Shown here one piece after another: positions 5,121-40,297 of a stretch of DNA of 64,000 nucleotides. A program made the position numbers and the translations under genes. The number at the start of each line of letters is the position of its first letter. Position 1 is the first letter of the stretch. Below the pieces are notes generated by a model. It did not search any database and was not told the DNA's origin. It was given only the letters and a program-made list of their open reading frames with translations. The stretch spans positions 310,001 through 374,000 of IMG/VR virus record IMGVR_UViG_3300028920_000001; one strand, 5' to 3'.

Positions 5121-5185
5121 GTGTGTACCTTACCATACAAACATTACATTCGTCAAGTGTTTTTATCACGTGTAATTTCGGAAAG

Positions 5186-18975: not shown

Positions 18976-20217
18976 ATGGCTCTCCTTTTTGTCAATTCGG
19001 GTATCCCTGCTGGACGCTTGCAGCTCTCTTTATTTAATCTAGAGGGTTATCCGCAAGATGCCTATAACGTAGGATATACTATATTTAAACAAGACGGAAC
19101 TCAAGTATCTGGACGTAATATTCCTGCAGTTAAAGTTGACACTGGAAGATATGAAGCTTCATGGGCTTGTTCTAATGTAGGTGGATGTTACAAAATTAAA
19201 TGGGAATATAAACCGGAATCTGGGCGCTCTGTTGAAATAATTTGTGATGATTTCTTTGTAGTTTCTCCTTCTTTTTATCAAAATTTCTTGGCGGGAGCCG
19301 CTTCTGGTCAGCCTCTTAGTACAACTTGTAAAGCGTTCTATTGTGGTCAGGCTCTCGGCGATGGTGATTTAAGTCTATATCTGAAAGATGCAAATGGATT
19401 TCCTGCTAATGCTTATGCAGTTTTTTGGTCCATAATTGATTGTTGTACTGGTTGTCCTTTAATTCAAAGAACTGAAGCTACTCCTGGAGCTGAAATTGGT
19501 TCGTATTATGCAAATTGGTTTGTTAATTTAACCGGAGGTGAATATAAGGTAAAATGGGAATGGATGGAGGAAGCTGATTCTCCATTAGAATCAGCTTGCA
19601 TGACATTTTCTATAATTTGTAATAATTTATTCAATGTTCTCGGAGAGTGTGTTACATCTGAATCTTTTTGTGTTTCTCCGGATGGATTAGATACCTGTTG
19701 CATAATTAAGAAAATTTATATCCCAGTTTCAAATCCTTGTAGCCCAGTTGGTCCAGGAATACCGGTGGTGCCAGTGACTGATCAATGCTGCCCATTTGAA
19801 ATCCCTCGAGTAGTTCATTTAATTACTCAAGTTTTGCCTGCAGGAGGCGCCTATACTACACAACCTGTTTATGAAATTCCGTCTAGAATTCGTAAAATAA
19901 TGTTCTACGTGACTTATAAGAGAGGAATAGCTGGTGGTTATGCTAATTTCAGATTGATGTGGGGAAATGGAACTGAAGAAATTCAATCTACTATGATTGA
20001 TTTAGATTTTGTGAATATAAATACGGCTAGATCTAGACAAGATGCATTTATGAATGATTTTAAAGGACCTGAACCAATAAATGATAATCAAGTAAATTTT
20101 GCATTTGAAGTTAATGTGCCAGGAGGTTCAACTACAGTCAGATTGCTTGCGTCTGAAGGTGGACAGGTAGGAGCGCCTGGGATAATAAGTATTACCTTAA
20201 CTGCTGCGAGTGATTAG
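18976..20217 (+). CDS. Cys-rich putative virion structural protein with two copies of a neck-protein-like domain
   Basis: Start at MALLFVNSG; two repeats similar to the N-terminus of 41408..42301; about 17 Cys. Confidence 0.65.
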
Positions 20218-23200: not shown

Positions 23201-26200
23201 GGGTGATCAAGGGTCACCTGGTGTCACAGGCCCTACAGGCCCTCAGGGTGTCACCGGTACTCAGGGTGATCAAGGATCACCTGGTGTCACAGGCCCTCAA
23301 GGATCACCTGGTGTCACAGGCCCTACAGGTCCAACAGGTCCCCAAGGTGTCACAGGCCCTACAGGCCCTCAGGGTGATCAGGGATCACCTGGAATTACGG
23401 GCACTATTGGTCCAACAGGTCCCCAGGGTGAGACAGGTGTTCAAGGAATTCAAGGAAGTCCTGGAGTAACAGGTGCTACAGGTCCTGCTGGATCTGCTAC
23501 TGGAGTCACCGGTCCCCAGGGGCCACAGGGGAGTCCAGGTGTCACAGGTTCTATAGGTCCACAAGGCAGCCCTGGTGTCACAGGTTCCCAGGGCGCTACA
23601 GGCCCACAAGGTTTCACCGGTCCCCAGGGGTCACCTGGTGCTACAGGCCCACAAGGTGTCACAGGCCCTCAGGGTGATCAGGGCTCACCTGGTGTCACCG
23701 GTCCAGTAGGGGCTACTGGATCCCAAGGTGCTCAAGGCTCACCTGGAGTTACAGGATTTACTGGGCCACAAGGCTCACCTGGAGTCACAGGTCCCCAAGG
23801 CTCACCTGGTGTCACTGGTTCTACAGGCCCCCAAGGTGTTCAAGGTTCACCAGGTGTCACGGGTCCACAAGGTTCACCTGGAGTCACAGGTCCCCAAGGT
23901 GTCACTGGTCCTATAGGTTCAACAGGTCCCCAAGGTGTTACAGGATCTACAGGTCCCCAAGGTCCCCAAGGCTCACCTGGAGTCACAGGTCCAACAGGCC
24001 CTCAAGGCGTCACAGGTCCACAGGGTGTTACCGGTTTTATAGGCCCTCAAGGCTCACCAGGTGTAACGGGTCCAACAGGTCCCCAAGGCGATCAGGGTTC
24101 TCCAGGTGTTACAGGGGCTACTGGACCTCAAGGTCCTACAGGCCCCCTGGGTGTCACAGGTCCAACAGGTCCCCAAGGCGATCAGGGAAGTCCTGGAATT
24201 ACTGGTGCGACAGGGGCTACTGGTCCTACAGGTCCCCAAGGTGTTACTGGACCACAGGGTGATCAGGGTTCACCAGGTGTCACAGGTCCACAAGGTGTCA
24301 CAGGTCCTACAGGCCCACAGGGTTCACCTGGAGTCACCGGTCCCATAGGTCCAACAGGTCTAACAGGTCCAACAGGTCCACAAGGGGTTACTGGTTCTAC
24401 AGGCCCTCAAGGCGAAACAGGGGTTACTGGTTCTACAGGCCCCCAAGGTGATCAAGGATCCCCGGGTGTTACAGGTCCTACTGGACCCCAAGGAGTCCAG
24501 GGATCACCAGGTGTTACAGGGGTAACTGGACCCCAAGCATCACCTGGTGTCACTGGTCCAGTAGGGGCTACTGGATCCCAAGGTGCTCAAGGCTCACCTG
24601 GAGTTACAGGATTTACTGGGCCACAAGGCTCACCTGGAGTCACAGGTCTTACAGGCCCCCAAGGTGCTCAAGGATCACCTGGAGTCACAGGCTCTACAGG
24701 TCCCCAAGGTGTTACTGGCCCACAGGGATCACCAGGTGTTACCGGGGCTACAGGCCCCCAAGGTGTCACAGGTCTTACAGGCCCCCAGGGCTCACCGGGT
24801 GTCACAGGCCCCCAAGGCTCACCGGGTGTCACAGGCCCCCAAGGCTCACCGGGTGTCACAGGCCCCCAAGGTGCTCAAGGCTCACCGGGTGTCACAGGTC
24901 CTACAGGTCCTGTTGGTCCACAGGGTGTTACTGGTTTTACTGGACCGCAGGGTGATCAGGGCAGTCCAGGTTTCACTGGTCCACAAGGTGATCAGGGCTC
25001 ACCTGGAGTTACAGGTCCTACAGGCCCCCAAGGTGTCACAGGCCCCCAAGGATCACCGGGTGTCACAGGTCCACCGGGTGTCACAGGTCCTATTGGACCG
25101 CAAGGTGATCAAGGCTCACCGGGTGTCACAGGTCCACAGGGTGATCAAGGCTCCCCGGGTGTTACAGGAGCTATAGGTGTCACCGGTCCACAAGGCGATC
25201 AGGGTTCACCTGGAGTCACAGGCCCTCAAGGTGTCACTGGTCCACAAGGTGATCAAGGCTCCCCAGGTGTTACAGGTGTTACAGGGGCTACAGGTCCACA
25301 AGGTGATCAGGGCTCACCTGGAGTCACAGGCCCCCAAGGTGTCACAGGTCCTACGGGTCCCCAAGGTGTTACCGGTTTCACAGGTTCTAAAGGTGATCAG
25401 GGTTCACCTGGAGTCACAGGTCCCCAAGGTGATCAGGGTTCACCTGGAGTCACCGGTTCTACGGGCCCTGTTGGCTTACAGGGTTCTCCAGGTGTTACAG
25501 GAGCTACAGGTCCACAAGGTGATCAGGGAAGTCCTGGTGTCACAGGTCCCCAAGGATCACCTGGTGTCACAGGCCCTACAGGCCCACAGGGTGTTCAGGG
25601 TTCACCAGGTGTCACAGGTTCTACAGGTCCACAAGGTGATCAAGGATCACCTGGAGTCACAGGAGCTTTAGGTCCAACAGGCCCCCAGGGTGATCAAGGC
25701 TCACCCGGAGTCACAGGCCCCCAAGGTGTCACAGGTCCTACGGGTCCCCAAGGTGTTACCGGTCCCCAAGGTGATCAAGGCTCCCCAGGTGTCACAGGAG
25801 CTATAGGCCCCCAAGGTGTTACCGGGGCTACAGGTCCTACGGGTCCCCAAGGTGATCAGGGATCACCTGGAATTACAGGCCCCCAAGGTGCTCAAGGATC
25901 ACCTGGAATTACAGGCCCCACAGGTCCTGTTGGCCCACAAGGCTCACCGGGTGTCACAGGAGCCACAGGTCCCCAAGGTTCTACAGGTCCACAGGGTTCA
26001 CCTGGAGTTACCGGTTCTACGGGTCCACAGGGTGATCAAGGCTCACCGGGTGTCACCGGTCTTACAGGCCCCCAAGGCTCACCGGGTGTCACCGGCCCCC
26101 AGGGTGTCACAGGTCCTACAGGTCCACAGGGTTCACCTGGAGTCACAGGTGCTACAGGACCACAAGGCGCTACAGGATTACAAGGATCAACAGGTTCTAC

Positions 26201-27434
26201 GGGTCCACAGGGTGATCAAGGATCACCTGGAGTCACAGGAGCTTTAGGTCCAACAGGCCCCCAGGGTGATCAAGGCTCCCCGGGTGTCACAGGAGCTACA
26301 GGCCCCCAAGGATCACCTGGTGTCACCGGTCCTACAGGCCCACAGGGTGTCACAGGTCCTATTGGACCGCAAGGTGATCAAGGCTCACCGGGTGTCACAG
26401 GTCCACAGGGTGATCAAGGGTCACCCGGAATTACGGGTGTCACAGGCCCTCAGGGTGATCAAGGCTCCCCGGGTGTCACAGGCCCCCAGGGTGTCACAGG
26501 TTCTATAGGTCCAACAGGTTCTATTGGACCGCAAGGTGATCAAGGCTCCCCAGGTGTCACAGGCCCCCAAGGTGTCACAGGCCCCCAAGGTGTCACAGGC
26601 CCCCAAGGTGTCACAGGTCCTACAGGCCCCCAGGGTGATCAGGGCTCACCAGGTGTCACCGGTCCTACAGGTCCCCAGGGTGATCAAGGATCACCGGGTG
26701 TTACAGGCCCCCAAGGTGATCAAGGATCACCAGGTCCTACAGGTCCACAGGGTGATCAAGGCTCTCCTGGTATTACAGGCCCCCAGGGTGATCAAGGCTC
26801 TCCTGGTATCACAGGAGCTACAGGTCCCCAAGGCGTCACAGGTCCCCAGGGTGATCAAGGCTCTCCTGGTGTCACAGGATCTACAGGCCCCCAGGGCTCT
26901 CCTGGTGTCACAGGCCCCCAAGGAGTCACAGGTCCTACGGGTCCCCAAGGTCCACAAGGTAGTCCTGGTGTAACTGGAGTTACTGGTTTTATTGGTCCTC
27001 AAGGATCGCCTGGAGTTACTGGTGCTACAGGTCCAGCTGGTGCTAGTACTGATTGGTTTAATTCTATTACAAGTAATACAACTATAACTTCAACTTCATT
27101 CGTTACTTTGTTATCTGTGAATATTACTAAAGCTACTTCTGGTTCGGTTCTTAAAATTTATGGAGTTGTTAATGGTGTTATTTCTTCTGCTCAGCAACAG
27201 ACAGAAGTTAGATTAAGAATTGATTCTACGACTTATATGGGTGGATCTCTTGATCAAGCTGCCAATACGAATGCAGCTTGTTGTTCATTTGTATACAGAG
27301 CAACTGGAATTTCGTCAGGAGCTCATACTGTAGAAATTCAAGTTAGATCAATTCAGCCTAGTCAATCAATTTATGTTAGACCTTCTACTTATCCTAATCG
27401 TGAGAGTGCTACACTGCTTGTTGAGGAGATTTAA
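20217..27434 (+). CDS. Giant collagen-like fibre protein (2405 aa)
   Basis: Gly-X-Y from residue 12 to about 2277 (about 755 triplets), Thr/Gln/Pro-rich, plus about 130-aa beta-rich C-terminal domain. Confidence 0.95.
20922..21931 (+). repeat. Exact ~92-bp direct repeat within the collagen gene (20922-21013 and 21840-21931)
   Basis: Identical DNA encoding [30 protein letters not shown], offset 918 bp (102 triplets). Confidence 0.85.
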
Positions 27435-27437
27435 TAG

Positions 27438-29783
27438 GTGGCTTCTTATAATTATTCAGTTTCCGGAGATTTTCCGAATAGCATAGTTGATAATGATCGT
27501 TTATGGGATGAGATTATTGCAGAAACTGCAATAACTGCTACACTCGAGTCAATAATAACTATTGGTGATACTTGTACAATCACGTTTGATATTGCTCTTT
27601 CAGGCGCTGAAGAAACTGCACTAGATAATGTTGTAGCTAATCATAGTGGTGAACCTAAAGCTTATCCTGAACCTATTTATAGTGATGATGTATTTACAGG
27701 GCCTTCTGCTACTGGTCCAGGTCGAGCTGGTATAATTCCAACTCCAATTGGTTCTGCTGCTGGTGTTGCTTCTGCTTATTTGCGAATTGATGGGACTTGG
27801 GATTATACTGGAGCTCTTGGCCCTACCGGGGCTCAAGGTGTAACTGGTCCACAAGGCATTACTGGAGTTACGGGTCCTCAAGGTGCAACGGGGGTCACTG
27901 GAGCCCGTGGTGCCACTGGAGTTACAGGCCCACGAGGTGCAACAGGCCCTACAGGTCCACGAGGTGCAACGGGGGTTACTGGATCACAGGGTGTTACAGG
28001 CCCACAAGGATCACCTGGAGTTACAGGCCCACGAGGTGCAACAGGCCCTACTGGTCCACAGGGATCACCTGGAGTCATTGGATCACAAGGGGTTACTGGA
28101 TCACAGGGTGTTACAGGCCCACAAGGATCACCTGGAGTTACAGGCCCTACAGGCCCACGAGGTGCAACAGGGGTCACTGGAGCCCGTGGTGCCACTGGAG
28201 TCACAGGCCCACGAGGTGCAACAGGGGTCACTGGAGCCCGTGGTGCAACAGGGGTCACAGGCCCTACAGGCCCACGAGGTGCAACAGGGGTCACTGGAGC
28301 CCGTGGTGCAACGGGGGTCACTGGAGTCCGTGGTGCCACTGGAGTCACAGGTCCACGGGGTGCCACTGGAGTTACAGGCCCTCAAGGCCCTCAAGGATCA
28401 CCAGGCGTAACTGGTGCAGGAGGAATCGTTGGTCCAGGATCTTCTACTGATAATGCTATAGTACGTTGGAATGGTACTGGTGGTAATCAAATTCAAGATT
28501 CTAATATTCTGGTTGATGATGATGGTAATATTGTAAATGCACGTACTACTCAATATGAATTATTAAGTCCTACTGCGGTTGCTTGGTCTGAGGGCATAGT
28601 TTTTTATGATGACGATCATCATACTTTAGCAGTTCATAATGACCAGTCTGATGCTACTCTTCGATTAGGGCAGGAAGAACATCTTCGTGTTTATAATAAT
28701 ACTGGATCTCAAATCAATAATGGAAGTGCCGTATATATTAGTGGTGCGAATGGGAACTTACCTACCGTAGCTTTAGCTCAATCTAATGCTTGGTCCACGG
28801 CTTATGCTGTTGGTCTTGCTACTCATGATATACCTAATGCTTCTGAGGGCATTATTACAGTTTTAGGGAATGTAACGATGGACACTACCGGGTTTTCTCC
28901 CGGTACCAGAGTTTATGTTTCTGCAGCTTCTCCTGGTTTATTAACTTCTACTTTACCCGCACAAGGAAACATTGTTGTTACAATTGGGGAAGTTATTAAT
29001 TCTGCTTCCGACGGCATGATTTATGTATCACCAAGTGGTCTTCCACTTGGTTCTAATAAGGAATTAGTTATTCCTGGCGATATTTATGTGAGCGCTAATG
29101 GTTCATCTTTATCCAACCCGCGCATTATTGGTGCGGTTGATATGACTTCTGGTGAGGGAGCTCGTTATCAATTTGGTGATGCTGCGAATGGCTGGCAGAA
29201 TGGCTATGATCAAGCTATGCAGTTGTGGGCATACCATACTATTATTCTTGAAGGTGATAGATCGAGTCTCACACCTCCTAGCATGGAGACTACTAGTAAT
29301 ATTAGTATACTAATTCGGAATACAACTGCCAGTAGTCCGGCATTAGTTGTACGTGGAGCATCTGGTCAGACAGCTAATCTTCAACAATGGCAGAGTTCTA
29401 CTCCAACAACATTGTGTAGTATTACATCATCTGGAAATTTTGATGCTAACAATCATGATTTAGATAATATTAGAACAGCTACTTTTAACGGTGTTATTGC
29501 TCATGGGTCCATGGGGTCTACAGAAACAATTAATTGGACTCAGGGTCAAAAACATTCAGGGACGAATAATGCAACCTGCACTATTAGTTTCACTAATCCT
29601 CCTGGACCTTGTAATTTGATTTTTGTATTAACAAATGGGGGAGCTTATACACTTACTTGGCCAGCTTCTGTGAATTGGGCTGGTGGATCACAACCCTCTT
29701 GGACAACAAGTGGTGTGGATATCATAGCGTTTTTCTTTGATGGGACCAACTATTTTGGAGTCGCTAGTTTGAACTTCTCATAG
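27438..29783 (+). CDS. Collagen-like tail/fibre protein (781 aa)
   Basis: 68 Gly-X-Y triplets (27810-28421); fibre modules [15 protein letters not shown]...GLATHDI; C-terminal [12 protein letters not shown]...[10 protein letters not shown] tail-fibre end. Confidence 0.9.
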
Positions 29784-31877: not shown

Positions 31878-34289
31878 ATGAATCAGGTTGCTCCAATATC
31901 TGTCTGTCTAATTACTAAAAATGAAGCTGGTCAAATTGAAAATTGTTTAAAATCTATCCGTCCGTATGTGGCTGAAATTTGTGTAGTTGATACTGGATCC
32001 TCAGATAATACTCCTGAAATTTGTAAAAAATACGCAGATAAACTTGAAACGTATACTGAATGTAATGATTCTCAGGGCCGAATAATATCATTTTCTAAGG
32101 CTCGAAATCGAAGTTTTGAATTAGCCAGTCAGCCTTGGGCTATGTGGGTTGATGGGGATGATGAGGTTCAAGGTGCTGAAAATTTATATAACGTAATTCA
32201 AAATCTTGATCATCTTTCTCGTCCCATTCTCATTTTGTTTCAATATGAATATTCTCATGACGATAAAGGAAATGTTACTTGTTTACATTGGAGAGAGCGA
32301 TTAGTTCAGCCTAAAGAACAATTTGAATGGGTAAATCCTGTTCATGAAGTATTGAATCCTAAAATACCGAATACTATTCATATTAGATCTGAAGCTGTTA
32401 GAATTATCCATCGACGAGATTTATCAGGTAAAATAATTGAACCAGGTCGCAATCTTCGAATTTTGAAAAAGCACTACGCAAATGTTGGGGAATCCGATGT
32501 TCGTAGTTTATATTATTTAGGATTAGAATATGGGAATAATGGTGATATTGAAAGTGCTTTAAAATTTCATAAGCGATATATTGAATTATCTGGTTGGGAT
32601 GATGAAAGATTTCAAGCATGTTTAAAAATCGTTGAACATTATCAGACTTCTGGTAGATATGAAGAAGCTATTGAATGGGCGCTTAAATCATTAACTATTA
32701 GAGAGGGATGGGCTGAGTCTTATTTTGCTTTAGCTAGGAACTATTATTTCTTGGCTCAACGGAATGATGCTAATTCGCGTCGTAATTGGGAAAGGTGTAT
32801 TTATTTTTCTAAATTAGGATTAGATTTTCCTCCGACTGAAACTATTTTATTTGTTAATCCGACTGAAAGAGACTTTGAGATCCATAAATATTTAAATGTA
32901 GCGTATAATAATGTTGGAAGGGTTGAAGACGCACTTGATAGTGTAAATACTGCACTTCAAATTAAAGGAGATCCAGGATTAGAACACAATAAACGATTAT
33001 ATGAACTTCATTTAGCTCGAGTGAGAATTAACACTGAATTAGACGTTCTTAATCGATATGAAAATGATGGAGGAATTTCTGTTAAAGCAAAGCATATTAT
33101 TGATTCAATATTGGACGGGAAGTTTTTGGTATCCCAGGAATTGGAACAAACTAAATCAGATAAGCTAGATATTGTTTTTTATGTTGGGAGTAGTATTGAG
33201 TCTTGGAATCCAAAAACAATAAAGAAAAATGGAATAGGAGGATCTGAGACAGCGGTTTGGGAAATGGGTCGTCGTTTTACTAAGATGGGTCATAGAGTTC
33301 GTGTATTCGGTGATTGTCCTGGACGGCTTGAAGGAGTCTTTGAGGATGTTGAATTTCTATATTATGATAAATGTAGGGATTTAACTTGTGATGTTTTTAT
33401 AACTTCTCGTCAGCCTCATATTGTTGATGATGGATTTAACATTAAATCTAAAATTAAATTATGCTGGGTCCATGACATTCATTGTGGATCTGGATTAAAT
33501 CATGAGCGGGCTTTGAAAATTGACAAGTTTTTATGTTTAAGTAAATGGCATAAGGATTTCTTCTTAGCTCAATATCCATATATACATCCTGATCAAGTTA
33601 TTGTAACTAGAAATGGTATTGATTTAAGTCGATTTGAATCAAATGATTCAATTATTAGAAATCCGCATAAGGGAGTTTATAGTAGTAGTCCTGATCGTGG
33701 ATTAGAGATTGCTATCAAATCTATGCCGAAGATTCGAGAACGAGTTCCAGATGCAGAACTTCATATATATTATGGATTTAAGAATTGGGAGATTTCTGCT
33801 AAATTAGCAAATAGTAAAGATCAAATGGAACTTATTCAATACTTGAAGATTTTGATTGAAGAACATGAAGAACATGGTGTAGTATTCCATGATCGATTAG
33901 ATCAAGATACACTAGCTAAGGAATTCGTGAGTGCAGGTGTGTGGATGTATCCAACTTGGTTTTCTGAGACATCGTGCATTACTGCAATGGAAGCTCAGGC
34001 AGCAGGTCTTCATATAGTTACTTCTCCAATTGCAGCATTGAATGAAACGGTCGGTGATCGCGGAACAATGATCGAGGGAGATTGGCTTTCTCCTGAATAT
34101 ATGGAAAAGTTTGTTAATGCTGTAGAATTTCACATGAATCGTTCAGGAGATGATGAGAGGAAGTCACTTCAGCAGTATGCTCGAGGGCATTTTGGATGGG
34201 ATTCTCTAGTAAATGATTGGGTTAAAATGTTTGAAAGTATAGTTGAAGAAGTGATGGAAAATATTGTTCCTGCGTTTAAATCGGTGTAA
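31878..34289 (+). CDS. Glycosyltransferase fusion: GT2 + TPR + GT4-like
   Basis: ISVCLITKNEA...VVDTGSSDNT...FSKARN...WVDGDD...VHE; TPR helices; GGSETAV, SSSPDRGL, ETSCITAMEAQAAG. Confidence 0.9.
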   Translation: MNQVAPISVCLITKNEAGQIENCLKSIRPYVAEICVVDTGSSDNTPEICKKYADKLETYTECNDSQGRIISFSKARNRSFELASQPWAMWVDGDDEVQGAENLYNVIQNLDHLSRPILILFQYEYSHDDKGNVTCLHWRERLVQPKEQFEWVNPVHEVLNPKIPNTIHIRSEAVRIIHRRDLSGKIIEPGRNLRILKKHYANVGESDVRSLYYLGLEYGNNGDIESALKFHKRYIELSGWDDERFQACLKIVEHYQTSGRYEEAIEWALKSLTIREGWAESYFALARNYYFLAQRNDANSRRNWERCIYFSKLGLDFPPTETILFVNPTERDFEIHKYLNVAYNNVGRVEDALDSVNTALQIKGDPGLEHNKRLYELHLARVRINTELDVLNRYENDGGISVKAKHIIDSILDGKFLVSQELEQTKSDKLDIVFYVGSSIESWNPKTIKKNGIGGSETAVWEMGRRFTKMGHRVRVFGDCPGRLEGVFEDVEFLYYDKCRDLTCDVFITSRQPHIVDDGFNIKSKIKLCWVHDIHCGSGLNHERALKIDKFLCLSKWHKDFFLAQYPYIHPDQVIVTRNGIDLSRFESNDSIIRNPHKGVYSSSPDRGLEIAIKSMPKIRERVPDAELHIYYGFKNWEISAKLANSKDQMELIQYLKILIEEHEEHGVVFHDRLDQDTLAKEFVSAGVWMYPTWFSETSCITAMEAQAAGLHIVTSPIAALNETVGDRGTMIEGDWLSPEYMEKFVNAVEFHMNRSGDDERKSLQQYARGHFGWDSLVNDWVKMFESIVEEVMENIVPAFKSV

Positions 34290-34291
34290 AT

Positions 34292-34957
34292 ATGCTTGGT
34301 TTATTATCATTTAAGGGCAAAGAGTTCAGATATGAATTCATACCAGGAAATATTCCTACTGGTCAGAACCCATCTTGGTATTCATTTGTAGATGAACAAT
34401 CAGTACGCGACAGATGGTGGAATATCGAAGAAGGTGATGTTATCTTTGATGTTGGATGTGCATATGGTTCTTACACCTTGCCGGCTTTAGTATTAGGAGC
34501 CAGTCACTGTTATTGTTGGAACCCCCTTGATTCAGAAATGTCTATTTTAGCTCAATCTTTAAAGCATAATGGGTGGGAAGATAAAGCTACTTTATTTATG
34601 GCTGGGCTATATAATAAGATTGGATTTCTTAACCCAGATACTCAAGAATTTTCTCAAGAATACAAAGATGGAATGTTTGCTGTTACGACTTTAGATCAAT
34701 ATTTAGAAGATCAGAAAATTAAATTAAGTAACTCTAAATGTTGGATGAAAATGGATGTTGAAGGAGCTGAATTAGAAATTCTTAAAGGAGGAACGAAATT
34801 ATTAAATCAATTTAGACCAAATATTATAATAGAAAATCATGTATTTAAGATTGCTGATATTCAGACACAGGTTCAGTCTTTTCTGGAATCATTGAATTTT
34901 AAACATGTAGAAACTGTTCCTTATCATGCTGTATCTCATTCTTTGTATATTCCATGA
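34292..34957 (+). CDS. FkbM-family SAM methyltransferase
   Basis: IFDVGCAYGSYT; VTTLDQY; MKMDVEGAELEILKGG. Confidence 0.9.
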   Translation: MLGLLSFKGKEFRYEFIPGNIPTGQNPSWYSFVDEQSVRDRWWNIEEGDVIFDVGCAYGSYTLPALVLGASHCYCWNPLDSEMSILAQSLKHNGWEDKATLFMAGLYNKIGFLNPDTQEFSQEYKDGMFAVTTLDQYLEDQKIKLSNSKCWMKMDVEGAELEILKGGTKLLNQFRPNIIIENHVFKIADIQTQVQSFLESLNFKHVETVPYHAVSHSLYIP

Positions 34958-36102
34958 AAATATTATTTGTTTTTGCCCCTTATTTGTTTTTGAGGGGTCT
35001 TTTTGACCATGGTAAAAAATATGATTTTGTAAATTTAAGGGACAATCCTAGAGGATTAACAGGTTCTGAAGTCTCTTGTTTCCAAATTGCTAAGCAATTT
35101 GCTCTAAAGGATCATGATGTTGCAATATCTACTACATTGAATTCAAATAGAATAAATATCTGGGAAAATGTCAATATTATACCTATGGATAATGTAGATG
35201 ACATTAAGAAAATTGTGAATGGTGATTGGGATGTTGTTTATTCTTGGAATGAAGTCAATGTTTTAAGATATGTAAATCCGAATTCACTTAGGATGATAAA
35301 TCTTCAAATTAATGACTTGGATCATGGTGAAGATGGATATGATGATTATGTAGATATATATACTAGTCCATCTGAATCTCACAAGTCTGTTATCGGCAAA
35401 TTAGCTCCTAATCTTAGCAAATGGGAAGTTGTGCCAAATGGATGTTATTTGGATATATATGACAAATTAAATCAAAACATAATAGATGGGAGAATAATTT
35501 ATGCATCTTCTCCAGATAGGGGTCTTCATTGGTTACTTCAAATATGGCCTTCAATTCGTAAGGCAGTTCCAGAAGCTCATTTAAAAATTTTTTATGAGAT
35601 TCAATCTTGGATAAATCGATTTAATGATATAGATCCAATATCGGTAACTAAAATAATGGCTCAACTTTCATGTCGAGCACGTTATATTAAAGAGGCTTTT
35701 AGAAGATTTGGATCAAATTCTGGAATTGAAGTTATTGGTTCTGTCAGTCGGAATCAGATTGCTAAAGAATTTGCTCAAGCTCAAATTTTAGCTTATCCTT
35801 GCGATACTGTTAGTTATACTGAAGGATTTTCAGTTACTTTGATGGAAGCGTGTGCTTCTAAAACTGTTCCAATCACTACTGATGTGGATGCTCTTGGAGA
35901 GATTTATGGATCTGCAGTTCCCATGGTGCATGCACCAATTGAGCCCAATTTGGATGAATATCGGGAGTTGGTAATTAGAGCGCTTACTGATTATAATTTT
36001 CGTCAGGAAGTGATCTCTAAAGCTAGGCAATTAGCAGAGCAGTATACCTGGGATAAGGTTGCTGATAAGGTGTTAGATATCATAGAAAAGAGACGAAAAT
36101 GA
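34954..36102 (+). CDS. GT4-like glycosyltransferase
   Basis: GLTGSE; YASSPDRGL; EGFSVTLMEACA; YTWDKVA. Confidence 0.9.
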   Translation: MKILFVFAPYLFLRGLFDHGKKYDFVNLRDNPRGLTGSEVSCFQIAKQFALKDHDVAISTTLNSNRINIWENVNIIPMDNVDDIKKIVNGDWDVVYSWNEVNVLRYVNPNSLRMINLQINDLDHGEDGYDDYVDIYTSPSESHKSVIGKLAPNLSKWEVVPNGCYLDIYDKLNQNIIDGRIIYASSPDRGLHWLLQIWPSIRKAVPEAHLKIFYEIQSWINRFNDIDPISVTKIMAQLSCRARYIKEAFRRFGSNSGIEVIGSVSRNQIAKEFAQAQILAYPCDTVSYTEGFSVTLMEACASKTVPITTDVDALGEIYGSAVPMVHAPIEPNLDEYRELVIRALTDYNFRQEVISKARQLAEQYTWDKVADKVLDIIEKRRK

Positions 36103-36566
36103 ATCATGATGAATATACAACAGCTGTGGATCAGGGTAAATGGCCATCCGATTCATTAGTTCCTTTAGATGATCCTTTCATTAATGAAAATGGGGTTATT
36201 CAGAATCTTCTTCTTAAGCCTGCAAATAGTTTTACTATCATTCATAGTAAACCATCTAGTATTCGTGCCAATCACTACCATAAGACTGATTGGCATTATT
36301 CATATGTAGTGAGTGGAAGAATTATTTATTTTGAGCGCAAAGTTGGCGATACTATTGTTCCAGAACCACAGTTTTATGAATCTGGAAAAATGTTTTTTAC
36401 TCCACCGATGGTGGAACATGTTATGTATTTTCCTGAACAAACAACTTTTGTGACTATGGCCAAAAATATACGTTCTCATGAAAGTCATGAATCTGATGTT
36501 GTCAGAGTTTCATTTTTAGATTTGGATCAAATACGAGATTTGTGTTGGAAAGCTTTGAGGAAATAA
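36099..36566 (+). CDS. Cupin-fold NDP-sugar epimerase/isomerase-like protein
   Basis: IRANHYHKTDWHYSYVVSG...FTPPMVEH. Confidence 0.8.
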   Translation: MNHDEYTTAVDQGKWPSDSLVPLDDPFINENGVIQNLLLKPANSFTIIHSKPSSIRANHYHKTDWHYSYVVSGRIIYFERKVGDTIVPEPQFYESGKMFFTPPMVEHVMYFPEQTTFVTMAKNIRSHESHESDVVRVSFLDLDQIRDLCWKALRK

Positions 36567-36567
36567 T

Positions 36568-37878
36568 ATGACTCTTCAAAGGATTCGGAAAGACTGTAGG
36601 CTGTGTGGAAGTGAAGAGCTTGAGAAAACTTTTGATTTAGAGGATTCTCCTCCAGCAAATGAATTTGTTACAGAATCAGAAATAGACAAGTCTCAGGAGA
36701 AGTTTCCACTCGGATTATGGGAATGTCAAAATTGTGGTCATGTTCAGTTACCTGTAGTAGTAAGCCCTGATCAGCTATTTCGTAATTATGTTTATGTATC
36801 TGGTACTAGCCCAGTTTTTGTAGATCATTTTCGTAAGTATGCCGAATCTTTAACTAATCGGGCCAATTTTCGAAAAGGAGACTGGGTAATTGATATTGGA
36901 AGTAATGATGGTACTCTTCTTAAATTTTTTAAAGAGAAGGGCGCTCGAGTTTTAGGTGTTGATCCGGCTAGAGATATTGCAGCTAAGGCAACAGTAGAAG
37001 GTATTGAAACTATTCCGGAATTTTTTACTAGTGAACTGGCTCAGAAAATTAGTGAAGAGCGAGATATTAGGACAACTAAGGCTAATGGAGCTAGATTCAT
37101 AACAGCGAATAATGTGTTTGCCCATGCTGATGATTTAGGTGATATTGTTAATGGAGTAAAGAAATTACTTGATACTAATGGGATATTTGTTTTTGAGGTT
37201 TCTTATTTAGTTGATGTGATAGAGAAGAATTTATTTGATACCATTTATCATGAGCATTTATCTTATCATCACTTAGGACCACTTATTAAATTTATGTTAT
37301 CTTATAATATGATGGTTAGCCATGCCGAGCGTATTGATACTCATGGCGGATCTTTACGGGTTTACTGTACGAGTTTGTTTAGTTCTGCTTTTGGAAAACC
37401 GTCGAGTTTAGTCCAAGAAATTCTTGAACACGAATTTAAGATGAACTTAAAAGGAAGTGGCTTTGATGATGTATTTAATGGATTTATGCCATTACATTCT
37501 TTGAAATCGAAGATTGATTCACTTCGTGATCAATTACTAAATAGATTGAAAGAGATTAAGTCAAGAGGAAAATCTATAGTAGTTTTTGGAGCTCCAGCTA
37601 AAGCCACTACTTTAATGCATCATTTTAAATTGGGTAAAGAAACCATTGATTTTGTGGTGGACGACTCTCCACTTAAACAGGGGTTATTTACTCCTGGAAC
37701 TCATATTCCTGTGGTATCGTCAAGTACCTTGTATGAAAAGAAGCCAGACTATTGTGTGATTTTGGCTTGGAATTTTGCAGAGCCAATTATGAAAAATCAT
37801 CAGGCTTATTTAGAACAAGGTGGAAAATTTATTGTACCAATACCAGAGTTAAAAGAATATGGAACTCCTAAAAACTGA
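36568..37878 (+). CDS. NDP-hexose C-methyltransferase (Zn-binding N-terminus, SAM domain, C-terminal domain)
   Basis: CRLCG...PPANEF...CQNCGHVQL; IDIGSNDGTLL; NNVFAH; FDTIYHEHLSY; HGGSLR; GAPAKATT; ILAWNFAEPI. Confidence 0.9.
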   Translation: MTLQRIRKDCRLCGSEELEKTFDLEDSPPANEFVTESEIDKSQEKFPLGLWECQNCGHVQLPVVVSPDQLFRNYVYVSGTSPVFVDHFRKYAESLTNRANFRKGDWVIDIGSNDGTLLKFFKEKGARVLGVDPARDIAAKATVEGIETIPEFFTSELAQKISEERDIRTTKANGARFITANNVFAHADDLGDIVNGVKKLLDTNGIFVFEVSYLVDVIEKNLFDTIYHEHLSYHHLGPLIKFMLSYNMMVSHAERIDTHGGSLRVYCTSLFSSAFGKPSSLVQEILEHEFKMNLKGSGFDDVFNGFMPLHSLKSKIDSLRDQLLNRLKEIKSRGKSIVVFGAPAKATTLMHHFKLGKETIDFVVDDSPLKQGLFTPGTHIPVVSSSTLYEKKPDYCVILAWNFAEPIMKNHQAYLEQGGKFIVPIPELKEYGTPKN

Positions 37879-38905
37879 TATTGATGAAATTGCCACTAGT
37901 TTAAACAGTTTGAGAGATGTTTTCGACGGAAAACGAATTCTCATTACTGGTGGATGTGGATTTTTAGGTCGATATTTTATCGAGACCTTTGTTTTTCTTA
38001 ATAAACACTTTCTTCGGAATCCCTGTGAATTAATTGTTTTAGATAACTTCATTACTTCTGGTGATAAGGGTGAATTACCAGAAACTAAGAACATTGCATT
38101 TATTGAACATGATATAATTAAGCCATTTTATCCAGAAAGACCGGTAGATTTCATTTTGCATGCAGCTGGAATAGCTAGCCCATTTTATTATCGTAAATAT
38201 CCATTAGAAACATTAGCAGTTGCTACTACTGGACTTCAGAATACGCTTGAACTTGCCCAAAAAAGTCCTGGATCAAGGTTACTTTTCTTTAGTTCGAGTG
38301 AGATTTATGGAGATCCAGATTCGAAATGTGTTCCTACTCAAGAAAGTTATCGTGGCAATGTGAGTTGTATCGGACCTCGCGCATGTTATGATGAATCGAA
38401 ACGATTGGGGGAGACTTTAATTGATATTTTTCATCAACAATATGGGGTTCATGCTACTGTAGTACGTCCATTTAATGTATACGGCCCGGGAATGTTGAAA
38501 ACTGATTATCGAGTGTTACCTAATTTTGGAGCTCGAATAAAAGAGGGTAAGCCGCTTCAAATTTATGGAACTGGAGATCAAACCAGAACTTTTTGTTATA
38601 TAACTGATGCTATTCGCGGGTTTTTACAAGTACTGGTTAGTGGTGTACCGGGGGAGCCTTACAATATTGGCAATCCAAGTCCTGAAATTTCCATGATTGA
38701 TTTGGCTTATGAGATTGGAAAGACTTTAGGAAAAGAAGTTAAATTTGATATAGTTGAATATCCTGATTCTTACCCAGCGGATGAACCTAATCGACGTTGT
38801 CCTGATATTACCAAAGCAGCACGTCAAGTTGGGTATGAGCCTTCCATACCTTTGCAAATGGGCTTGAAGAGATTCTTTGATTGGGTTGAAGAGGCATATA
38901 AGTGA
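37859..38905 (+). CDS. UDP-glucuronate decarboxylase-like extended SDR
   Basis: ITGGCGFLG; HAAGIASP; SSSEIYGD; GPRACYDESKR; RPFNVYGP; QTRTFCY. Confidence 0.85.
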   Translation: MELLKTDIDEIATSLNSLRDVFDGKRILITGGCGFLGRYFIETFVFLNKHFLRNPCELIVLDNFITSGDKGELPETKNIAFIEHDIIKPFYPERPVDFILHAAGIASPFYYRKYPLETLAVATTGLQNTLELAQKSPGSRLLFFSSSEIYGDPDSKCVPTQESYRGNVSCIGPRACYDESKRLGETLIDIFHQQYGVHATVVRPFNVYGPGMLKTDYRVLPNFGARIKEGKPLQIYGTGDQTRTFCYITDAIRGFLQVLVSGVPGEPYNIGNPSPEISMIDLAYEIGKTLGKEVKFDIVEYPDSYPADEPNRRCPDITKAARQVGYEPSIPLQMGLKRFFDWVEEAYK

Positions 38906-39771
38906 GATTCACTCTTGTAGGTTGTGGCGCTTGGGGAAAAAATTACTTAAAAACTGTTAAAACTATTCCAGGTATAGAAATTTCTAATGTAATTAAGCGA
39001 AGCATTCTTTCTGAAGATGCACGTACATTAATGTCGAAATATGGATTAACAATTTCAACTCCAGATGCTTTAGATTATATTAATCCAACTGGAGTTATAA
39101 TTGCTACTCCCCCACAGACACATAAAGATATGGTTATTCCACTTTTACAAAGGAAAATCCCCGTTTTATTGGAAAAACCTGTTGCTCATACTTATGGTGA
39201 TGCAAAAGAAATTTTTGAAGCTGCTAAGGCTACCGGAACCCTTTTGTTAGTGAATAATATTCATTTATTTGCTGACGCGTTTTTGAGTTTAAAAGATAGC
39301 TTAGTTCATCGACCCATCCATATTGTTTCTTGTGGAGGAAATCAGGGTCCATTTCGTGATTATTCTTCATTGTTAGATTACGCTCCTCATGATTTAGCAA
39401 TGTGTTTGTCATTGTTTGATGGGCAAAATCCAGATCAAGTAGAGATAAATAAAATAAACAGACCCAGAGGTGAGACTTATACTATTGCTTTAAAATTTGG
39501 TGATAGTTCTGCTGAGCTTGTGGTTGGGAATGGCATGACTGGAAAGCGTCGATATTTTGAAGTAACACAAGGTAGAAATAAGATTGTTTATGATGATTTG
39601 GCTTATTCAAAATTAATCGTAAATGGCATAGGTACGATGAAAACTCAAGAACCTCCATTAACTCGAGTGATTCAAACATTTGCGAAATCTATTATTGATA
39701 ACAATCGTGATTGGAGGTTTGACTATGAATTAAATCTGAGAATTATGAAGATTATTCAACAAGGACTATGA
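38902..39771 (+). CDS. Gfo/Idh/MocA family oxidoreductase
   Basis: VGCGAWG; IATPPQTH; VLLEKP; DYAPHDL. Confidence 0.9.
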   Translation: MRFTLVGCGAWGKNYLKTVKTIPGIEISNVIKRSILSEDARTLMSKYGLTISTPDALDYINPTGVIIATPPQTHKDMVIPLLQRKIPVLLEKPVAHTYGDAKEIFEAAKATGTLLLVNNIHLFADAFLSLKDSLVHRPIHIVSCGGNQGPFRDYSSLLDYAPHDLAMCLSLFDGQNPDQVEINKINRPRGETYTIALKFGDSSAELVVGNGMTGKRRYFEVTQGRNKIVYDDLAYSKLIVNGIGTMKTQEPPLTRVIQTFAKSIIDNNRDWRFDYELNLRIMKIIQQGL

Positions 39772-39772
39772 A

Positions 39773-40297
39773 TTAAGTAGTCATTATATCTTCAATCTGT
39801 TTTGTATGCGTGACATCTATTGTTTTTTCCCATCTTTGCCAATAAGATGGGAGAACGTGTCTTAGCCAATGTTCTTTATCATAATAAGCTGGTTCAATTT
39901 CTAGTATATAAAATAAGTGATGCGCTGCATCAATGGCTTCTTTACCGGAAGCAGTTTTAAGTAAATGAATGGTTGTTGAAATTTCATATGGATCAATAGT
40001 CAACTTGGGAAGGTTTTTAATTACGTGATGAGGACTTTTACAAAACCAATTTTTTTCATAGACTCTTACCTGAGCTAAATAATTTCCACCATTTGATACT
40101 GCAAATGCAGATGAGTTGTAAACATGTAGCGTGTTTTGAGGTTTAATCCATATTTCTTTTTCAATTCTGATAGTCATTCCATCTTGATTAAAGATAAGAT
40201 AAATCCAAGCTGGAGATCTAAATTTAGTACTCCTACATTTAGTGATTTCTTCAATCTTAATTCTGAAAGTATTAACTTGGTTCCAATCAGTATCCAT
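39773..40297 (-). CDS. Hypothetical protein
   Basis: ORF track, start moved to ATG 40297; ends EDIMTT. Confidence 0.6.
   Translation of the reverse strand: MDTDWNQVNTFRIKIEEITKCRSTKFRSPAWIYLIFNQDGMTIRIEKEIWIKPQNTLHVYNSSAFAVSNGGNYLAQVRVYEKNWFCKSPHHVIKNLPKLTIDPYEISTTIHLLKTASGKEAIDAAHHLFYILEIEPAYYDKEHWLRHVLPSYWQRWEKTIDVTHTKQIEDIMTT

What the first reader, a model, noticed from the sequence alone, without database searches (positions are those of the whole stretch)
36099..39771. Predicted pathway to a C-methyl-branched, possibly pentose, nucleotide sugar
Seen: cupin, C-methyltransferase, SDR with the GPRACYDESKR signature close to UDP-xylose synthase, and a Gfo/Idh/MocA reductase, plus an FkbM methyltransferase upstream. 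Established: NDP-hexose 3-C-methyltransferases act on 4-keto sugars (mycarose-type pathways); UDP-GlcA decarboxylases pass through UDP-4-keto-xylose, which ArnA releases. Inference: decarboxylation, 3-C-methylation, epimerisation and 4-ketoreduction would give a 3-C-methyl pentose, possibly O-methylated by FkbM. No nucleotidyltransferase or UDP-Glc dehydrogenase is in the window, so the precursor would be host-derived.
Basis: inference. Interest (0 to 1): 0.65.

Follow-up and report, generated by a model that had tools for sequence, protein, structure and literature searches.

The report
Phage cassette for C-methyl pentose sugar
A 427-kb phage carries a widespread but uncharacterised four-gene module that most likely turns the host's UDP-glucuronic acid into a methyl-branched five-carbon sugar, probably to decorate the phage's collagen-like tail fibres.

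Summary
Window 36099-39771 holds four tightly packed genes: a cupin, a TylC3/MtmC-type sugar C-methyltransferase, a UDP-xylose-synthase-like SDR and a Gfo/Idh/MocA oxidoreductase. An FkbM methyltransferase and two glycosyltransferases lie upstream, and before them two collagen-like fibre genes.

The window belongs to a complete 426,960-bp phage. That genome has only this one extended SDR, and no UDP-glucose dehydrogenase, nucleotidyltransferase or sugar aminotransferase.

The four genes form a conserved cassette. They occur in the same order in 50 of 65 informative bacterial loci from many phyla, and in other jumbo phages.

The SDR keeps every UXS catalytic residue. It forms its own clade, sister to the ordinary UXS found in the same genomes. 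In a second, mostly viral version of the cassette, the same cupin + C-methyltransferase + Gfo-fold trio pairs with an ArnA/U4kpxs-type decarboxylase, a family that releases UDP-4-keto-pentose. This is strong indirect support for a pentose substrate.

The cupin looks most like 3,4-ketoisomerases, and epimerisation would achieve nothing on a C3-methylated pentose. The branch position (C3 or C4/C2) is therefore open.

Verdict: a new variant of a known kind. The nearest precedent is the maduropeptin amino-pentose pathway. There is no biochemical proof.

The parts
20217..27434 (+). Collagen-like fibre protein, 2405 aa; proposed acceptor of the sugar (inference)
   Evidence: Pfam Collagen, 1092 bits. 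It has 754 G-X-Y triplets with Thr at Y in 317 of them. The repeats explain the high-GC block seen.
27438..29783 (+). Collagen-like tail-fibre protein, 781 aa
   Evidence: Pfam Collagen E 1e-31. PHROG tail-fibre families, E down to 9e-49. 70 G-X-Y triplets, 38 with Thr at Y.
31878..34289 (+). Three-part glycosyltransferase: GT2 domain, TPR repeats, GT4 domain (803 aa)
   Evidence: Pfam Glycos_transf_2 E 6e-17, TPR_1 and TPR_8, Glycos_transf_1 and Glyco_trans_1_4. Homologues at 43-61% identity sit upstream of the cassette in L002, L005 and L097-L101.
34292..34957 (+). FkbM-family methyltransferase; probable O-methylation of the glycan (inference)
   Evidence: PF05050 E 6e-13 and TIGR01444 at 53.5 bits, above the 37.7 cut-off.
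34954..36102 (+). GT4 glycosyltransferase, 382 aa
   Evidence: Glycos_transf_1 E 1e-12. Homologues lie directly upstream of the cupin in related phage contigs.
36099..36566 (+). Nucleotide-sugar cupin; candidate 3,4-ketoisomerase (or 3-epimerase) acting on the 4-keto-pentose
   Evidence: AF2 pLDDT 95.8. Foldseek and VIA top hits are FdtA, FdtD, QdtA and WlaRA/RB, Z 12-12.7. H59, H61 and H107 are invariant in all three cassette types.
36568..37878 (+). SAM-dependent NDP-keto-sugar C-methyltransferase (TylC3/MtmC/TcaB9 family)
   Evidence: Pfam Methyltransf_13, _23 and _14. MtmC 4rv9 E 1e-77, with the CxxC..CxxC, VFAHxDD and YHEHLSY motifs kept.
37859..38905 (+). UXS-like extended SDR; probable UDP-glucuronate 4-oxidase/decarboxylase and entry step of the pathway
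   Evidence: hUXS1 E 4e-63. All catalytic residues are kept in 57 cassette members, which form a clade sister to canonical UXS. It is the only PF01370 protein in the genome.
38902..39771 (+). Gfo/Idh/MocA oxidoreductase; probable ketoreductase for the methylated keto-pentose
   Evidence: PF01408 E 8e-18. The EKP motif and D159-x3-H163 are conserved. The orphan structure 3c1a is an orthologue of the Magnetospirillum cassette member.

Best explanation
Genes 36099-39771 are a phage copy of a conserved, uncharacterised four-enzyme module. It most likely converts host UDP-glucuronic acid into a UDP-activated, C-methyl-branched pentose.

Proposed order:
1. The UXS-like SDR oxidises C4 and decarboxylates, giving UDP-4-keto-pentose. 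The residues needed for this chemistry are shown; the activity is inferred.
2. The cupin and the TylC3-type C-methyltransferase act as an obligate pair on the keto-pentose through a 3,4-enediolate. SAM puts a methyl group on a carbon next to the keto group. This is C3 if the 4-keto sugar is methylated directly. It is C4 (or C2) if the cupin first moves the keto group to C3, as its closest structural relatives do. This step is inferred.
3. The Gfo/Idh/MocA enzyme reduces the remaining keto group. Where Gfo is absent, the SDR's own bound NADH may do this. This step is inferred.

In the phage, the adjacent GT2-TPR-GT4 and GT4 transferases and the FkbM methyltransferase would then build an O-methylated glycan. 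The likely target is the Thr-rich collagen-like tail fibres encoded just upstream. This is inferred from gene order, which recurs in related phages.
For: **Gene content.**

**SDR.**
- Residues equivalent to hUXS1 T118/E120/Y147/K151/N176/R277 are kept, and are invariant in all 57 cassette SDRs.
- These 57 form one clade (SH-aLRT 99), sister to ordinary UXS paralogues at 38-41% identity in 4 of 5 genomes checked. One of those paralogues lies beside a UGDH gene.

**Whole phage genome.** One extended SDR; no UGDH, NTP-transferase or DegT.

**Synteny.**
- Cupin, C-methyltransferase, SDR and Gfo occur in this order in 50 of 65 informative loci. The loci come from Actinomycetota, Myxococcota, Acidobacteriota, Rhodospirillales, Prochlorococcus, Comamonadaceae and others.
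- The same order is found in jumbo-phage contigs L097-L100.

**Non-orthologous replacement of the decarboxylase.**
- The 229-aa protein folds as Gfo/Idh/MocA.
- A third type carries a UGDH-like gene.

**Other enzymes.**
- C-methyltransferase motifs are intact.
- All top-50 structural hits of the cupin are NDP-4-keto-sugar isomerases or epimerases, apart from the engineered cupin metalloproteins (9j9*, 9kyn, 9uyw) in the list.
- The Gfo catalytic EKP and D-x3-H motifs are kept.

**Fibres.**
- Collagen genes precede the GT genes here and in L100 and L101.
- Thr occupies the Y position in 42% of triplets.

**Precedent.** A decarboxylase followed by a C-methyltransferase, giving a 3-C-methyl amino-pentose, is proposed for maduropeptin (PMC10951976). 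RsU4kpxs and ArnA release UDP-4-keto-pentose (PMC5607165).
Against: - No activity, product or glycan has been measured anywhere for this cassette, and no paper on it was found.
- Canonical UXS enzymes keep their NADH and reduce the intermediate to UDP-xylose. Nothing in the sequence shows that this clade releases the keto sugar.
- The SDR fails the NCBIfam cut-offs: NF008872 scores 81 bits against a cut-off of 294.
- Every characterised TylC3-family enzyme uses dTDP-4-keto-6-deoxyhexoses, not UDP-pentoses.
- The cupin's role is unresolved, because ketoisomerase and epimerase matches are nearly tied.
- The Gfo gene is missing next to the SDR in 9 loci.
- The link to the collagen fibres rests on gene order alone.
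Confidence: 0.6

Rival explanations
1. There are two separate jobs. The SDR is a plain UDP-xylose synthase that supplies xylose to the glycosyltransferases. The C-methyltransferase, cupin and Gfo enzyme work on a host NDP-4-keto-6-deoxyhexose, such as dTDP-4-keto-6-deoxyglucose from host RmlA/B, to make a mycarose- or evalose-like 3-C-methyl-6-deoxyhexose. In that scheme the cupin is the 5- or 3,5-epimerase, like TylK or EvaD.
For: - All characterised relatives of the C-methyltransferase (MtmC, TcaB9, KijD1) use dTDP-4-keto-6-deoxy sugars.
- RmlC-, EvaD- and ChmJ-type epimerases score nearly as well as ketoisomerases for the cupin (Z about 11.5 against 12.7).
- The SDR's closest solved relative is a true UXS that makes UDP-xylose.
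Against: - The SDR is locked into the cassette in one order across phyla. It forms a clade distinct from the ordinary UXS already present in the same genomes, so it is not merely a xylose supplier.
- When the SDR is replaced, the replacement is another UDP-GlcA decarboxylase of the keto-releasing ArnA/U4kpxs type, not a 4,6-dehydratase.
- No RmlA- or RmlB-like gene recurs beside the cassette.
- The cupin is ketoisomerase-sized (155 aa) and gives no hit to the RmlC Pfam family.
Confidence: 0.15
2. The substrate and enzymes are as in the main explanation, but the chemistry differs in detail. The cupin is a metal-dependent enzyme that does something other than ketoisomerisation or epimerisation. 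Examples are an alpha-ketol (acyloin) methyl shift on the 3-C-methyl-4-keto sugar, or a ring contraction. Alternatively the methyl group goes to C5, giving a 6-deoxyhexose skeleton.
For: - The cupin keeps the classical metal-binding positions H59, H61, D64 and H107, which align to the oxalate decarboxylase metal motif.
- CapF's zinc cupin is among the structural hits.
- A minimal 3-C-methyl-pentose route, as in maduropeptin, needs no cupin at all, so the strict cupin and C-methyltransferase pairing asks for an extra role.
Against: - D64 is replaced by Thr in the UGDH-type cassettes, so a full metal tetrad is not universal.
- No precedent is known to me for such a cupin reaction on nucleotide sugars.
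- The fold matches are all to ordinary metal-free isomerases and epimerases, or to CapF.
Confidence: 0.12
3. The SDR is not a decarboxylase at all. It would be a 4-ketoreductase or 4-epimerase that finishes a pathway started by host enzymes.
For: Extended SDRs change function easily. The protein is below every NCBIfam equivalog cut-off.
Against: The Glu and Arg equivalent to hUXS1 E120 and R277, which I recall as the decarboxylation-specific residues, are invariant in 57 of 57 members. The protein scores about 100 bits higher against UXS than against any dehydratase, epimerase or reductase.
Confidence: 0.05

Closest known systems
Maduropeptin amino-sugar pathway (MdpA1-A6, Actinomadura madurae), as summarised in PMC10951976
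   Same: An NDP-glucuronic acid decarboxylase makes an NDP-4-keto-pentose. A SAM-dependent sugar C-methyltransferase then branches it, giving a 3-C-methyl pentose.
   Different: - The maduropeptin route ends with a transaminase and gives a 4-amino sugar. It has its own nucleotidyltransferase and dehydrogenase, and no cupin or Gfo enzyme.
- The cassette here has no aminotransferase anywhere in the genome. It has a cupin and a Gfo oxidoreductase, and it depends on host UDP-GlcA.
- The maduropeptin steps are themselves proposals from a gene cluster.
UDP-xylose synthase (hUXS1, bacterial UXS); ArnA C-terminal domain and RsU4kpxs
   Same: Extended SDR with the S/T-Y-K triad plus the Glu, Arg and Asn residues used for C4 oxidation and decarboxylation of UDP-GlcA. 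ArnA and RsU4kpxs release UDP-4-keto-pentose for a downstream enzyme (PMC5607165).
   Different: - The phage SDR belongs to a separate clade, sister to canonical UXS, with about 40 clade-specific invariant positions.
- It is only distantly related to ArnA (55-58 bits).
- Whether it releases the keto intermediate is unknown.
Mycarose-type branched deoxysugar pathways (TylC3/EryBIII/MtmC C-3 methyltransferase, TylK/EvaD cupin epimerase, 4-ketoreductase)
   Same: The same C-methyltransferase family with the Zn-ribbon and catalytic motifs. The logic is also the same: a cupin plus a ketoreductase around a keto-sugar enolate.
   Different: Those pathways start from dTDP-glucose through a 4,6-dehydratase and act on 6-deoxyhexoses. 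Here the entry enzyme is a decarboxylase, the sugar would be a UDP-pentose, the cupin is FdtA-sized, and the reductase is Gfo/Idh/MocA rather than an SDR.
FdtA/QdtA/WlaRA/WlaRB sugar 3,4-ketoisomerases
   Same: They are the best structural matches of the cupin (Z 12-12.7, rmsd 2.2-2.6 over 114-121 residues). The size is similar, and the His-x-His of the first cupin motif plus a third His are invariant.
   Different: There is no detectable sequence-family match: no FdtA Pfam hit, and 13-18% identity in the structural alignments. Known ketoisomerases feed aminotransferases, not C-methyltransferases, and they use dTDP-hexoses.
Glycosylated collagen-like surface fibres (Bacillus anthracis BclA; Mimivirus fibrils); from my own knowledge, not tested here
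   Same: Long G-X-Thr collagen repeats encoded beside genes for unusual sugars, methyltransferases and glycosyltransferases.
   Different: Here the carrier is a tail-fibre-like protein of a jumbo phage. No glycosylation has been shown.

Membership tests
UDP-glucuronate decarboxylase / UDP-xylose synthase (extended SDR) | GxxGxxG NAD-binding motif and the S/T-Y-K catalytic triad | tested here: met
   GGCGFLG at residue 31; S146, Y177 and K181 align to hUXS1 T118, Y147 and K151. All are invariant in 57 cassette SDRs.
UDP-glucuronate decarboxylase / UDP-xylose synthase (extended SDR) | Decarboxylation and enol-protonation residues (hUXS1 E120, R277, N176; residue roles from my own knowledge) | tested here: met
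   E148, R313 and N206 are aligned and invariant in 57 of 57 members.
UDP-glucuronate decarboxylase / UDP-xylose synthase (extended SDR) | Falls inside the canonical UXS clade or passes a curated equivalog cut-off | tested here: not met
   It is a separate clade (SH-aLRT 99), sister to the UXS paralogues of the same genomes, in a quick tree. NF008872 scores 81 bits against a cut-off of 294.
UDP-glucuronate decarboxylase / UDP-xylose synthase (extended SDR) | Converts UDP-GlcA to UDP-4-keto-pentose or UDP-xylose with loss of CO2 | not testable with these tools
   Needs an enzyme assay.
TylC3/TcaB9/MtmC NDP-sugar C-methyltransferases | N-terminal four-Cys zinc domain, class I SAM fold and the C-terminal Methyltransf_14 domain | tested here: met
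   PF08421 at 67.8 bits, PF13489, and PF08484 at 164.5 bits, all above their cut-offs. CxxC..CxxC is visible in the alignment.
TylC3/TcaB9/MtmC NDP-sugar C-methyltransferases | Catalytic His/Glu motif (YHEH) and the VFAH motif (residue roles from my own knowledge of TcaB9) | tested here: met
   TIYHEHLSY and NVFAHADD align with the same strings of MtmC 4rv9.
TylC3/TcaB9/MtmC NDP-sugar C-methyltransferases | Methylates C3 of an NDP-4-keto sugar | not testable with these tools
   Regiochemistry and nucleotide preference cannot be read from the sequence.
FdtA/QdtA sugar 3,4-ketoisomerases | Small cupin fold that binds an NDP-4-keto sugar | tested here: met
   Z 12.0-12.7, rmsd 2.2-2.6, 114-121 residues aligned; Foldseek E 3.5e-7. 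This is only about 1 Z unit above the RmlC-type epimerases.
FdtA/QdtA sugar 3,4-ketoisomerases | Sequence membership (Pfam FdtA family) | tested here: not met
   Only weak Cupin_2 and Polysacc_synt_C hits in Pfam. A profile search of PDB sequences finds no ketoisomerase.
FdtA/QdtA sugar 3,4-ketoisomerases | Active-site histidine cluster (FdtA His49/His51/His95, from my own knowledge) | tested here: inconclusive
   H59, H61 and H107 are invariant in all three cassette types and have matching spacing. No residue-level structural superposition was available.
RmlC-type 3,5-epimerases | Sequence family dTDP_sugar_isom and a length of about 180-200 aa | tested here: not met
   No Pfam hit. The protein is 155 aa. 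Fold similarity is Z 10.4-11.6.
Gfo/Idh/MocA oxidoreductases | N-terminal Rossmann domain, EKP motif and the C-terminal D-x3-H motif | tested here: met
   PF01408 at 65.8 bits, cut-off 24. E91-K92-P93 and D159/H163 are conserved in 43 cassette members.
FkbM methyltransferases | Family models above their cut-offs | tested here: met
   PF05050 at 49.8 bits (cut-off 22.7) and TIGR01444 at 53.5 bits (cut-off 37.7).
Maduropeptin-type C-methyl amino-pentose pathway | Sugar aminotransferase (DegT/DnrJ/EryC1) that completes the pathway | tested here: not met
   No PF01041 match in the 427-kb genome.

The most novel reading that the evidence does not exclude
The cupin is a true 3,4-ketoisomerase that hands a UDP-3-keto-pentose to the C-methyltransferase. 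The methyl group then lands on C4 (or C2), and the Gfo enzyme acts as a 3-ketoreductase like KijD10. The product would be a 4-C- (or 2-C-) methyl pentose made by a TylC3-type enzyme. As far as I know, this regiochemistry and sugar class have not been described for this enzyme family. The sugar would be used by jumbo phages to coat collagen-like tail fibres, and by many bacteria, through polyprenyl-phosphate carriers, to modify their envelopes.
Probability: 0.3. Interest if true: 0.75.

Novelty: new variant of a known kind. Interest (0 to 1): 0.62.

Why it matters
**A new route to rare sugars.** C-branched sugars are rare, and C-methyl pentoses rarer still. The known routes are apiose synthase, radical-SAM methylation after glycosyl transfer (garosamine, from my own knowledge), and the proposed maduropeptin route.

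This cassette would be a compact, portable path from a universal precursor to a new UDP-sugar. The cupin has more than 1300 homologue clusters. Relatives turn up in 179 species genomes and in 85 viral contigs, including Prochlorococcus and marine Rhodospirillales.

**What it would explain and open up.**
- An orphan crystal structure, 3c1a, would get a function.
- Phage surface glycosylation becomes testable. A glycan coat on a 2400-residue collagen-like fibre could affect host recognition or resistance to proteases.
- It would supply new enzymes for glyco-engineering.

In many bacterial loci the cassette sits beside a small GT2 that resembles polyprenyl-phosphate sugar synthases, and in fewer loci beside a PMT_2 (GT-C-type) transferase. 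This hints at an envelope modification analogous to the Ara4N system.

Tried and rejected
- **DNA search.** A blastn search of 34000-40000 against 50,697 phage records found no match.
- **Literature.** Five searches for the cassette, for C-methyl pentoses or for phage C-methyltransferases found nothing relevant.
- **Cupin by sequence.** Single-sequence and profile searches of the cupin against PDB sequences gave only weak matches to the metal motif of oxalate decarboxylase. They did not place it in a family; the fold search did.
- **Curated models.** NCBIfam gave no equivalog for any of the four proteins.
- **The 229-aa protein X.** hhalign of the X profile against the Gfo profile gave only 8.5% probability, although the EK(P/G) and His motifs lined up. 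The question was settled by folding X.
- **UDP-apiose synthase.** Rejected for the SDR: 62 bits against 217 bits for UXS.
- **Amino-sugar variant.** Rejected because the genome has no DegT.
- **Tree quality.** The careful tree search did not finish within the time limit. The quick IQ-TREE result is the one used. It contains long outgroup branches, so only the cassette-versus-UXS split is quoted.
- **ORF filter artefact.** My nested-ORF filter lost some Gfo genes in high-GC loci. The count of 50 of 65 combines that result with the tblastn table.

Full report
**Where the window lies.**
- The window is bases 310001-374000 of a 426,960-bp IMG/VR virus record with direct terminal repeats. CheckV rates it complete, so it is a jumbo phage.
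- Base composition is uneven, with GC from 0.33 to 0.59. The high-GC block at 20-31 kb is explained by two collagen-repeat genes.

**Checking the observation.**
- The run on the + strand is GT2-TPR-GT4 (31878-34289), FkbM (34292-34957), GT4 (34954-36102), cupin (36099-36566), C-methyltransferase (36568-37878), extended SDR (37859-38905) and Gfo/Idh/MocA (38902-39771).
- Neighbouring genes overlap by 4 or 20 nt, or are 1-2 nt apart. This indicates one translationally coupled operon.
- Consensus promoter and terminator scans were no richer than shuffled sequence and add nothing.

**The SDR.**
- Its best solved relative is human UXS1 (E 4e-63, 217 bits). The next family scores 114 bits. ArnA scores 55-58 bits, dTDP-glucose dehydratases about 80 bits and UDP-apiose synthase 62 bits.
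- In the residue alignment the SSSE, YDESK, FNVYGP and NRRCPD strings match hUXS1 T118-S119-E120, Y147/K151, N176 and R277. The roles of these residues are from my own knowledge of the UXS literature.
- It is the only PF01370 protein in the whole phage genome. The genome has no UDP-glucose dehydrogenase, no sugar nucleotidyltransferase and no DegT aminotransferase.
- So no 4,6-dehydratase is available to feed the C-methyltransferase, and the precursor must be a host nucleotide sugar.

**The cassette is conserved.**
- The cupin has more than 1300 homologue clusters at roughly 50-67% identity.
- Three genomic contexts were read: a phage-like contig, an unnamed bacterium and Nonomuraea. All showed cupin, C-methyltransferase, SDR and Gfo in the same order.
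- A scan of one genome per GTDB species found 179 relatives, and 80 loci were fetched. They come from Methylobacter, Polyangiales, Nonomuraea, Actinoplanes, Micromonospora, Planctomycetota, Acidobacteriota, Comamonadaceae, many marine Rhodospirillales, Prochlorococcus, Magnetospirillum and others.
- Of the 65 loci with enough downstream sequence, 50 have all four genes in the phage's order.
- Nine have cupin, C-methyltransferase and SDR but no Gfo gene next to them. There the SDR is followed by a small GT2, a WecA-like transferase or other genes.

**The cassette SDR is a distinct clade.**
- Four of five cassette-bearing genomes checked also hold an ordinary UXS-like paralogue, 38-41% identical to the phage SDR by blastp. 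One of these lies beside a UGDH gene.
- In a quick maximum-likelihood tree the 57 cassette SDRs, the phage's included, form one clade (SH-aLRT 99). That clade is sister to these UXS paralogues (97).
- The six catalytic positions are invariant in all 57. About 40 other positions are fixed differently from UXS.
- The phage SDR sits nearest Comamonadaceae and Burkholderiaceae sequences, but with weak support (89).

**Non-orthologous replacement, the strongest indirect evidence.** Viral contigs hold three versions of the module.
1. L097-L100 are contigs of 62-274 kb, three of them over 150 kb. They share the phage's own arrangement, including the GT2-TPR-GT4 and GT4 genes.
2. More than 40 contigs carry cupin, C-methyltransferase, a 229-aa protein X, and a 337-aa SDR.
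[quoted passage not shown] It scores 363 bits on ArnA.
   - X has no family hit. Its AF2 model (pLDDT 80.7) matches Gfo/Idh/MocA oxidoreductases (Foldseek E 5.5e-9). Language-model features and motif-level alignment gave the same hint.
3. About 15 contigs carry C-methyltransferase, cupin, a short SDR, a UGDH-like gene and another extended SDR.

The same cupin, C-methyltransferase and Gfo-fold trio has therefore recruited two unrelated kinds of UDP-GlcA decarboxylase. One of them belongs to the family known to release UDP-4-keto-pentose (PMC5607165). This is hard to explain unless the trio works on that keto-pentose.

**The C-methyltransferase.**
- It is 265 bits from MtmC (a D-mycarose 3-C-methyltransferase) and about 195 bits from TcaB9 and KijD1.
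- The four zinc cysteines and the VFAHxDD and YHEHLSY motifs are kept.

**The cupin.**
- Sequence methods barely place it. They show only that H59, H61, D64 and H107 sit at the classical cupin metal positions.
- The AF2 model is confident (pLDDT 95.8). Nearly all of its top structural matches are nucleotide-4-keto-sugar cupins; the rest are engineered cupin metalloproteins.
- The 3,4-ketoisomerases FdtA, FdtD, QdtA, WlaRA/RB and HCAN_0198 come first (Z 12.0-12.7). ChmJ and RmlC-type epimerases follow (about 11.5), then the zinc cupin of CapF (11.3).
- H59, H61, H107, R56, N58, R125 and D133 are invariant across all three cassette types. D64 is not.

**Why the epimerase step is doubtful (inference from established chemistry).**
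- Methylation of C3 goes through a 3,4-enediolate, which erases the C3 configuration. It leaves C3 quaternary.
- C5 of a pentose is not a stereocentre.
The maduropeptin route needs no cupin.
- A ketoisomerase would have a real job, and it would move the site of methylation to C4 or C2.

**The Gfo enzyme.**
- It keeps the Rossmann motif, the EKP motif and D-x3-H.
- Its nearest curated model is a UDP-GlcNAc 3-dehydrogenase, at 68 bits and below the cut-off.
- The Magnetospirillum cassette member is nearly identical to the orphan structural-genomics entry 3c1a (E 8e-116). It also hits the sugar 3-ketoreductase 3rbv, which from my own knowledge is KijD10, at E 6e-9.
- From my own knowledge, nucleotide-sugar enzymes of this family usually act at C3. 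That fits the ketoisomerase reading but does not prove it.

**What the phage does with the sugar (inference).**
- Directly upstream lie a 2405-aa protein with 754 G-X-Y triplets and a 781-aa collagen-like protein. The second matches PHROG tail-fibre families.
- Thr fills the Y position in 317 of the 754 triplets. From my own knowledge, this resembles the O-glycosylated GXT repeats of Bacillus BclA.
- Collagen-like genes also precede the multidomain GT in the related contigs L100 and L101, and there is a trace in L002.
- The TPR block in the GT suggests a protein acceptor.

**In bacteria the neighbours differ.**
- A small GT2 lies next to the cassette in 34 of 82 loci. It resembles polyprenyl-phosphate sugar synthases (AglJ, PpgS, ArnC), all below their cut-offs.
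- A PMT_2-type transferase appears in 17 loci, a WecA-like transferase in 15 and asparagine synthase in 13.
- This suggests lipid-linked export of the sugar in the manner of Ara4N. That is a lead only.

**Comparison with what is known.**
- The nearest precedent is the proposed maduropeptin route: decarboxylase MdpA3, C-methyltransferase MdpA4, then transaminase MdpA5. It gives 4-amino-4-deoxy-3-methyl-ribose (PMC10951976).
- The present cassette shares the first two steps. It then swaps the transaminase for a cupin and a Gfo oxidoreductase, relies on host UDP-GlcA, and is far more widespread.
- I found no paper that describes it. The library is incomplete, so that absence is not proof.

**Verdict.**
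- The general claim, a C-methyl-branched UDP-pentose made from UDP-GlcA, gets about 0.6 confidence on comparative evidence alone.
- The branch position, the cupin's reaction and the acceptor are open.
- This is a new variant of a known kind. It is of good interest to glycobiologists and phage biologists, and directly testable in vitro.

Noticed in passing
L005:5483-7885 and L097:11708-15145: In two related contigs the cassette SDR gene is interrupted by inteins. The Methylobacter-MAG contig, probably phage, has one insertion. The 242-kb viral contig probably has two. Both show Intein_splicing plus LAGLIDADG domains, and the SDR halves flank the insert. Inteins in a nucleotide-sugar SDR are unusual.
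   Followed up: partly
PDB 3c1a versus L068:12763-13680: The structural-genomics entry 3c1a ('putative oxidoreductase') is an orthologue of the Gfo member of the Magnetospirillum cassette (E 8e-116). A solved structure therefore already exists for this orphan pathway.
   Followed up: yes
window 48942-49934 (+): A 330-aa protein matches the Pfam Volactin family end to end (E 3.5e-73). It is an actin-like protein in a jumbo phage. From my own knowledge the family was defined on an archaeal cytoskeletal protein.
   Followed up: no
window 12031-13518 (+) and 42348-43802 (+): Two Mom-family proteins, which suggest DNA base modification. One is fused to a Vsr/REase-like domain and the other to an HNH motif.
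   Followed up: no
window 40287-40937 (-): A short (216 aa) nucleotidyltransferase with ATP-dependent DNA ligase and mRNA-capping-enzyme catalytic domain matches lies on the opposite strand, just downstream of the sugar operon.
   Followed up: no
window 5123-6955 (+): A 610-aa protein with a peptidoglycan transglycosylase (PF00912) domain (E 2e-42). This points to a bacterial host with a murein wall.
   Followed up: no
L103-L161 and L162-L176 (viral contigs): There are two further viral versions of the module. One has an ArnA/U4kpxs-type decarboxylase and a miniature 229-aa Gfo-fold protein. The other has a UGDH-like gene that is only 258 aa long. The first kind sits near PhoH and DNA ligase genes in L110.
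   Followed up: partly
L049:10001-12439: One Rhodospirillales locus has cupin, SDR and Gfo but no C-methyltransferase between them. This may be a natural 'unmethylated' variant or a gene loss.
   Followed up: no
G000:C1:412204-413130 (outside the window) and window end, about 63894-64000 (-): There are further collagen-repeat ORFs elsewhere in the phage genome: a 519-aa one near 412 kb and a 208-aa one at the window's end.
   Followed up: no
L003 and L007 (Nonomuraea), L010 (Actinoplanes): In Nonomuraea (L003) the cassette sits in what looks like a secondary-metabolite cluster. The cluster has a DHQ-synthase-like gene, DegT, a condensation domain, a pre-ATP-grasp protein, an aldehyde dehydrogenase, a GT2 and a Laminin_G_3 protein. 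The sugar may also decorate a natural product.
   Followed up: no
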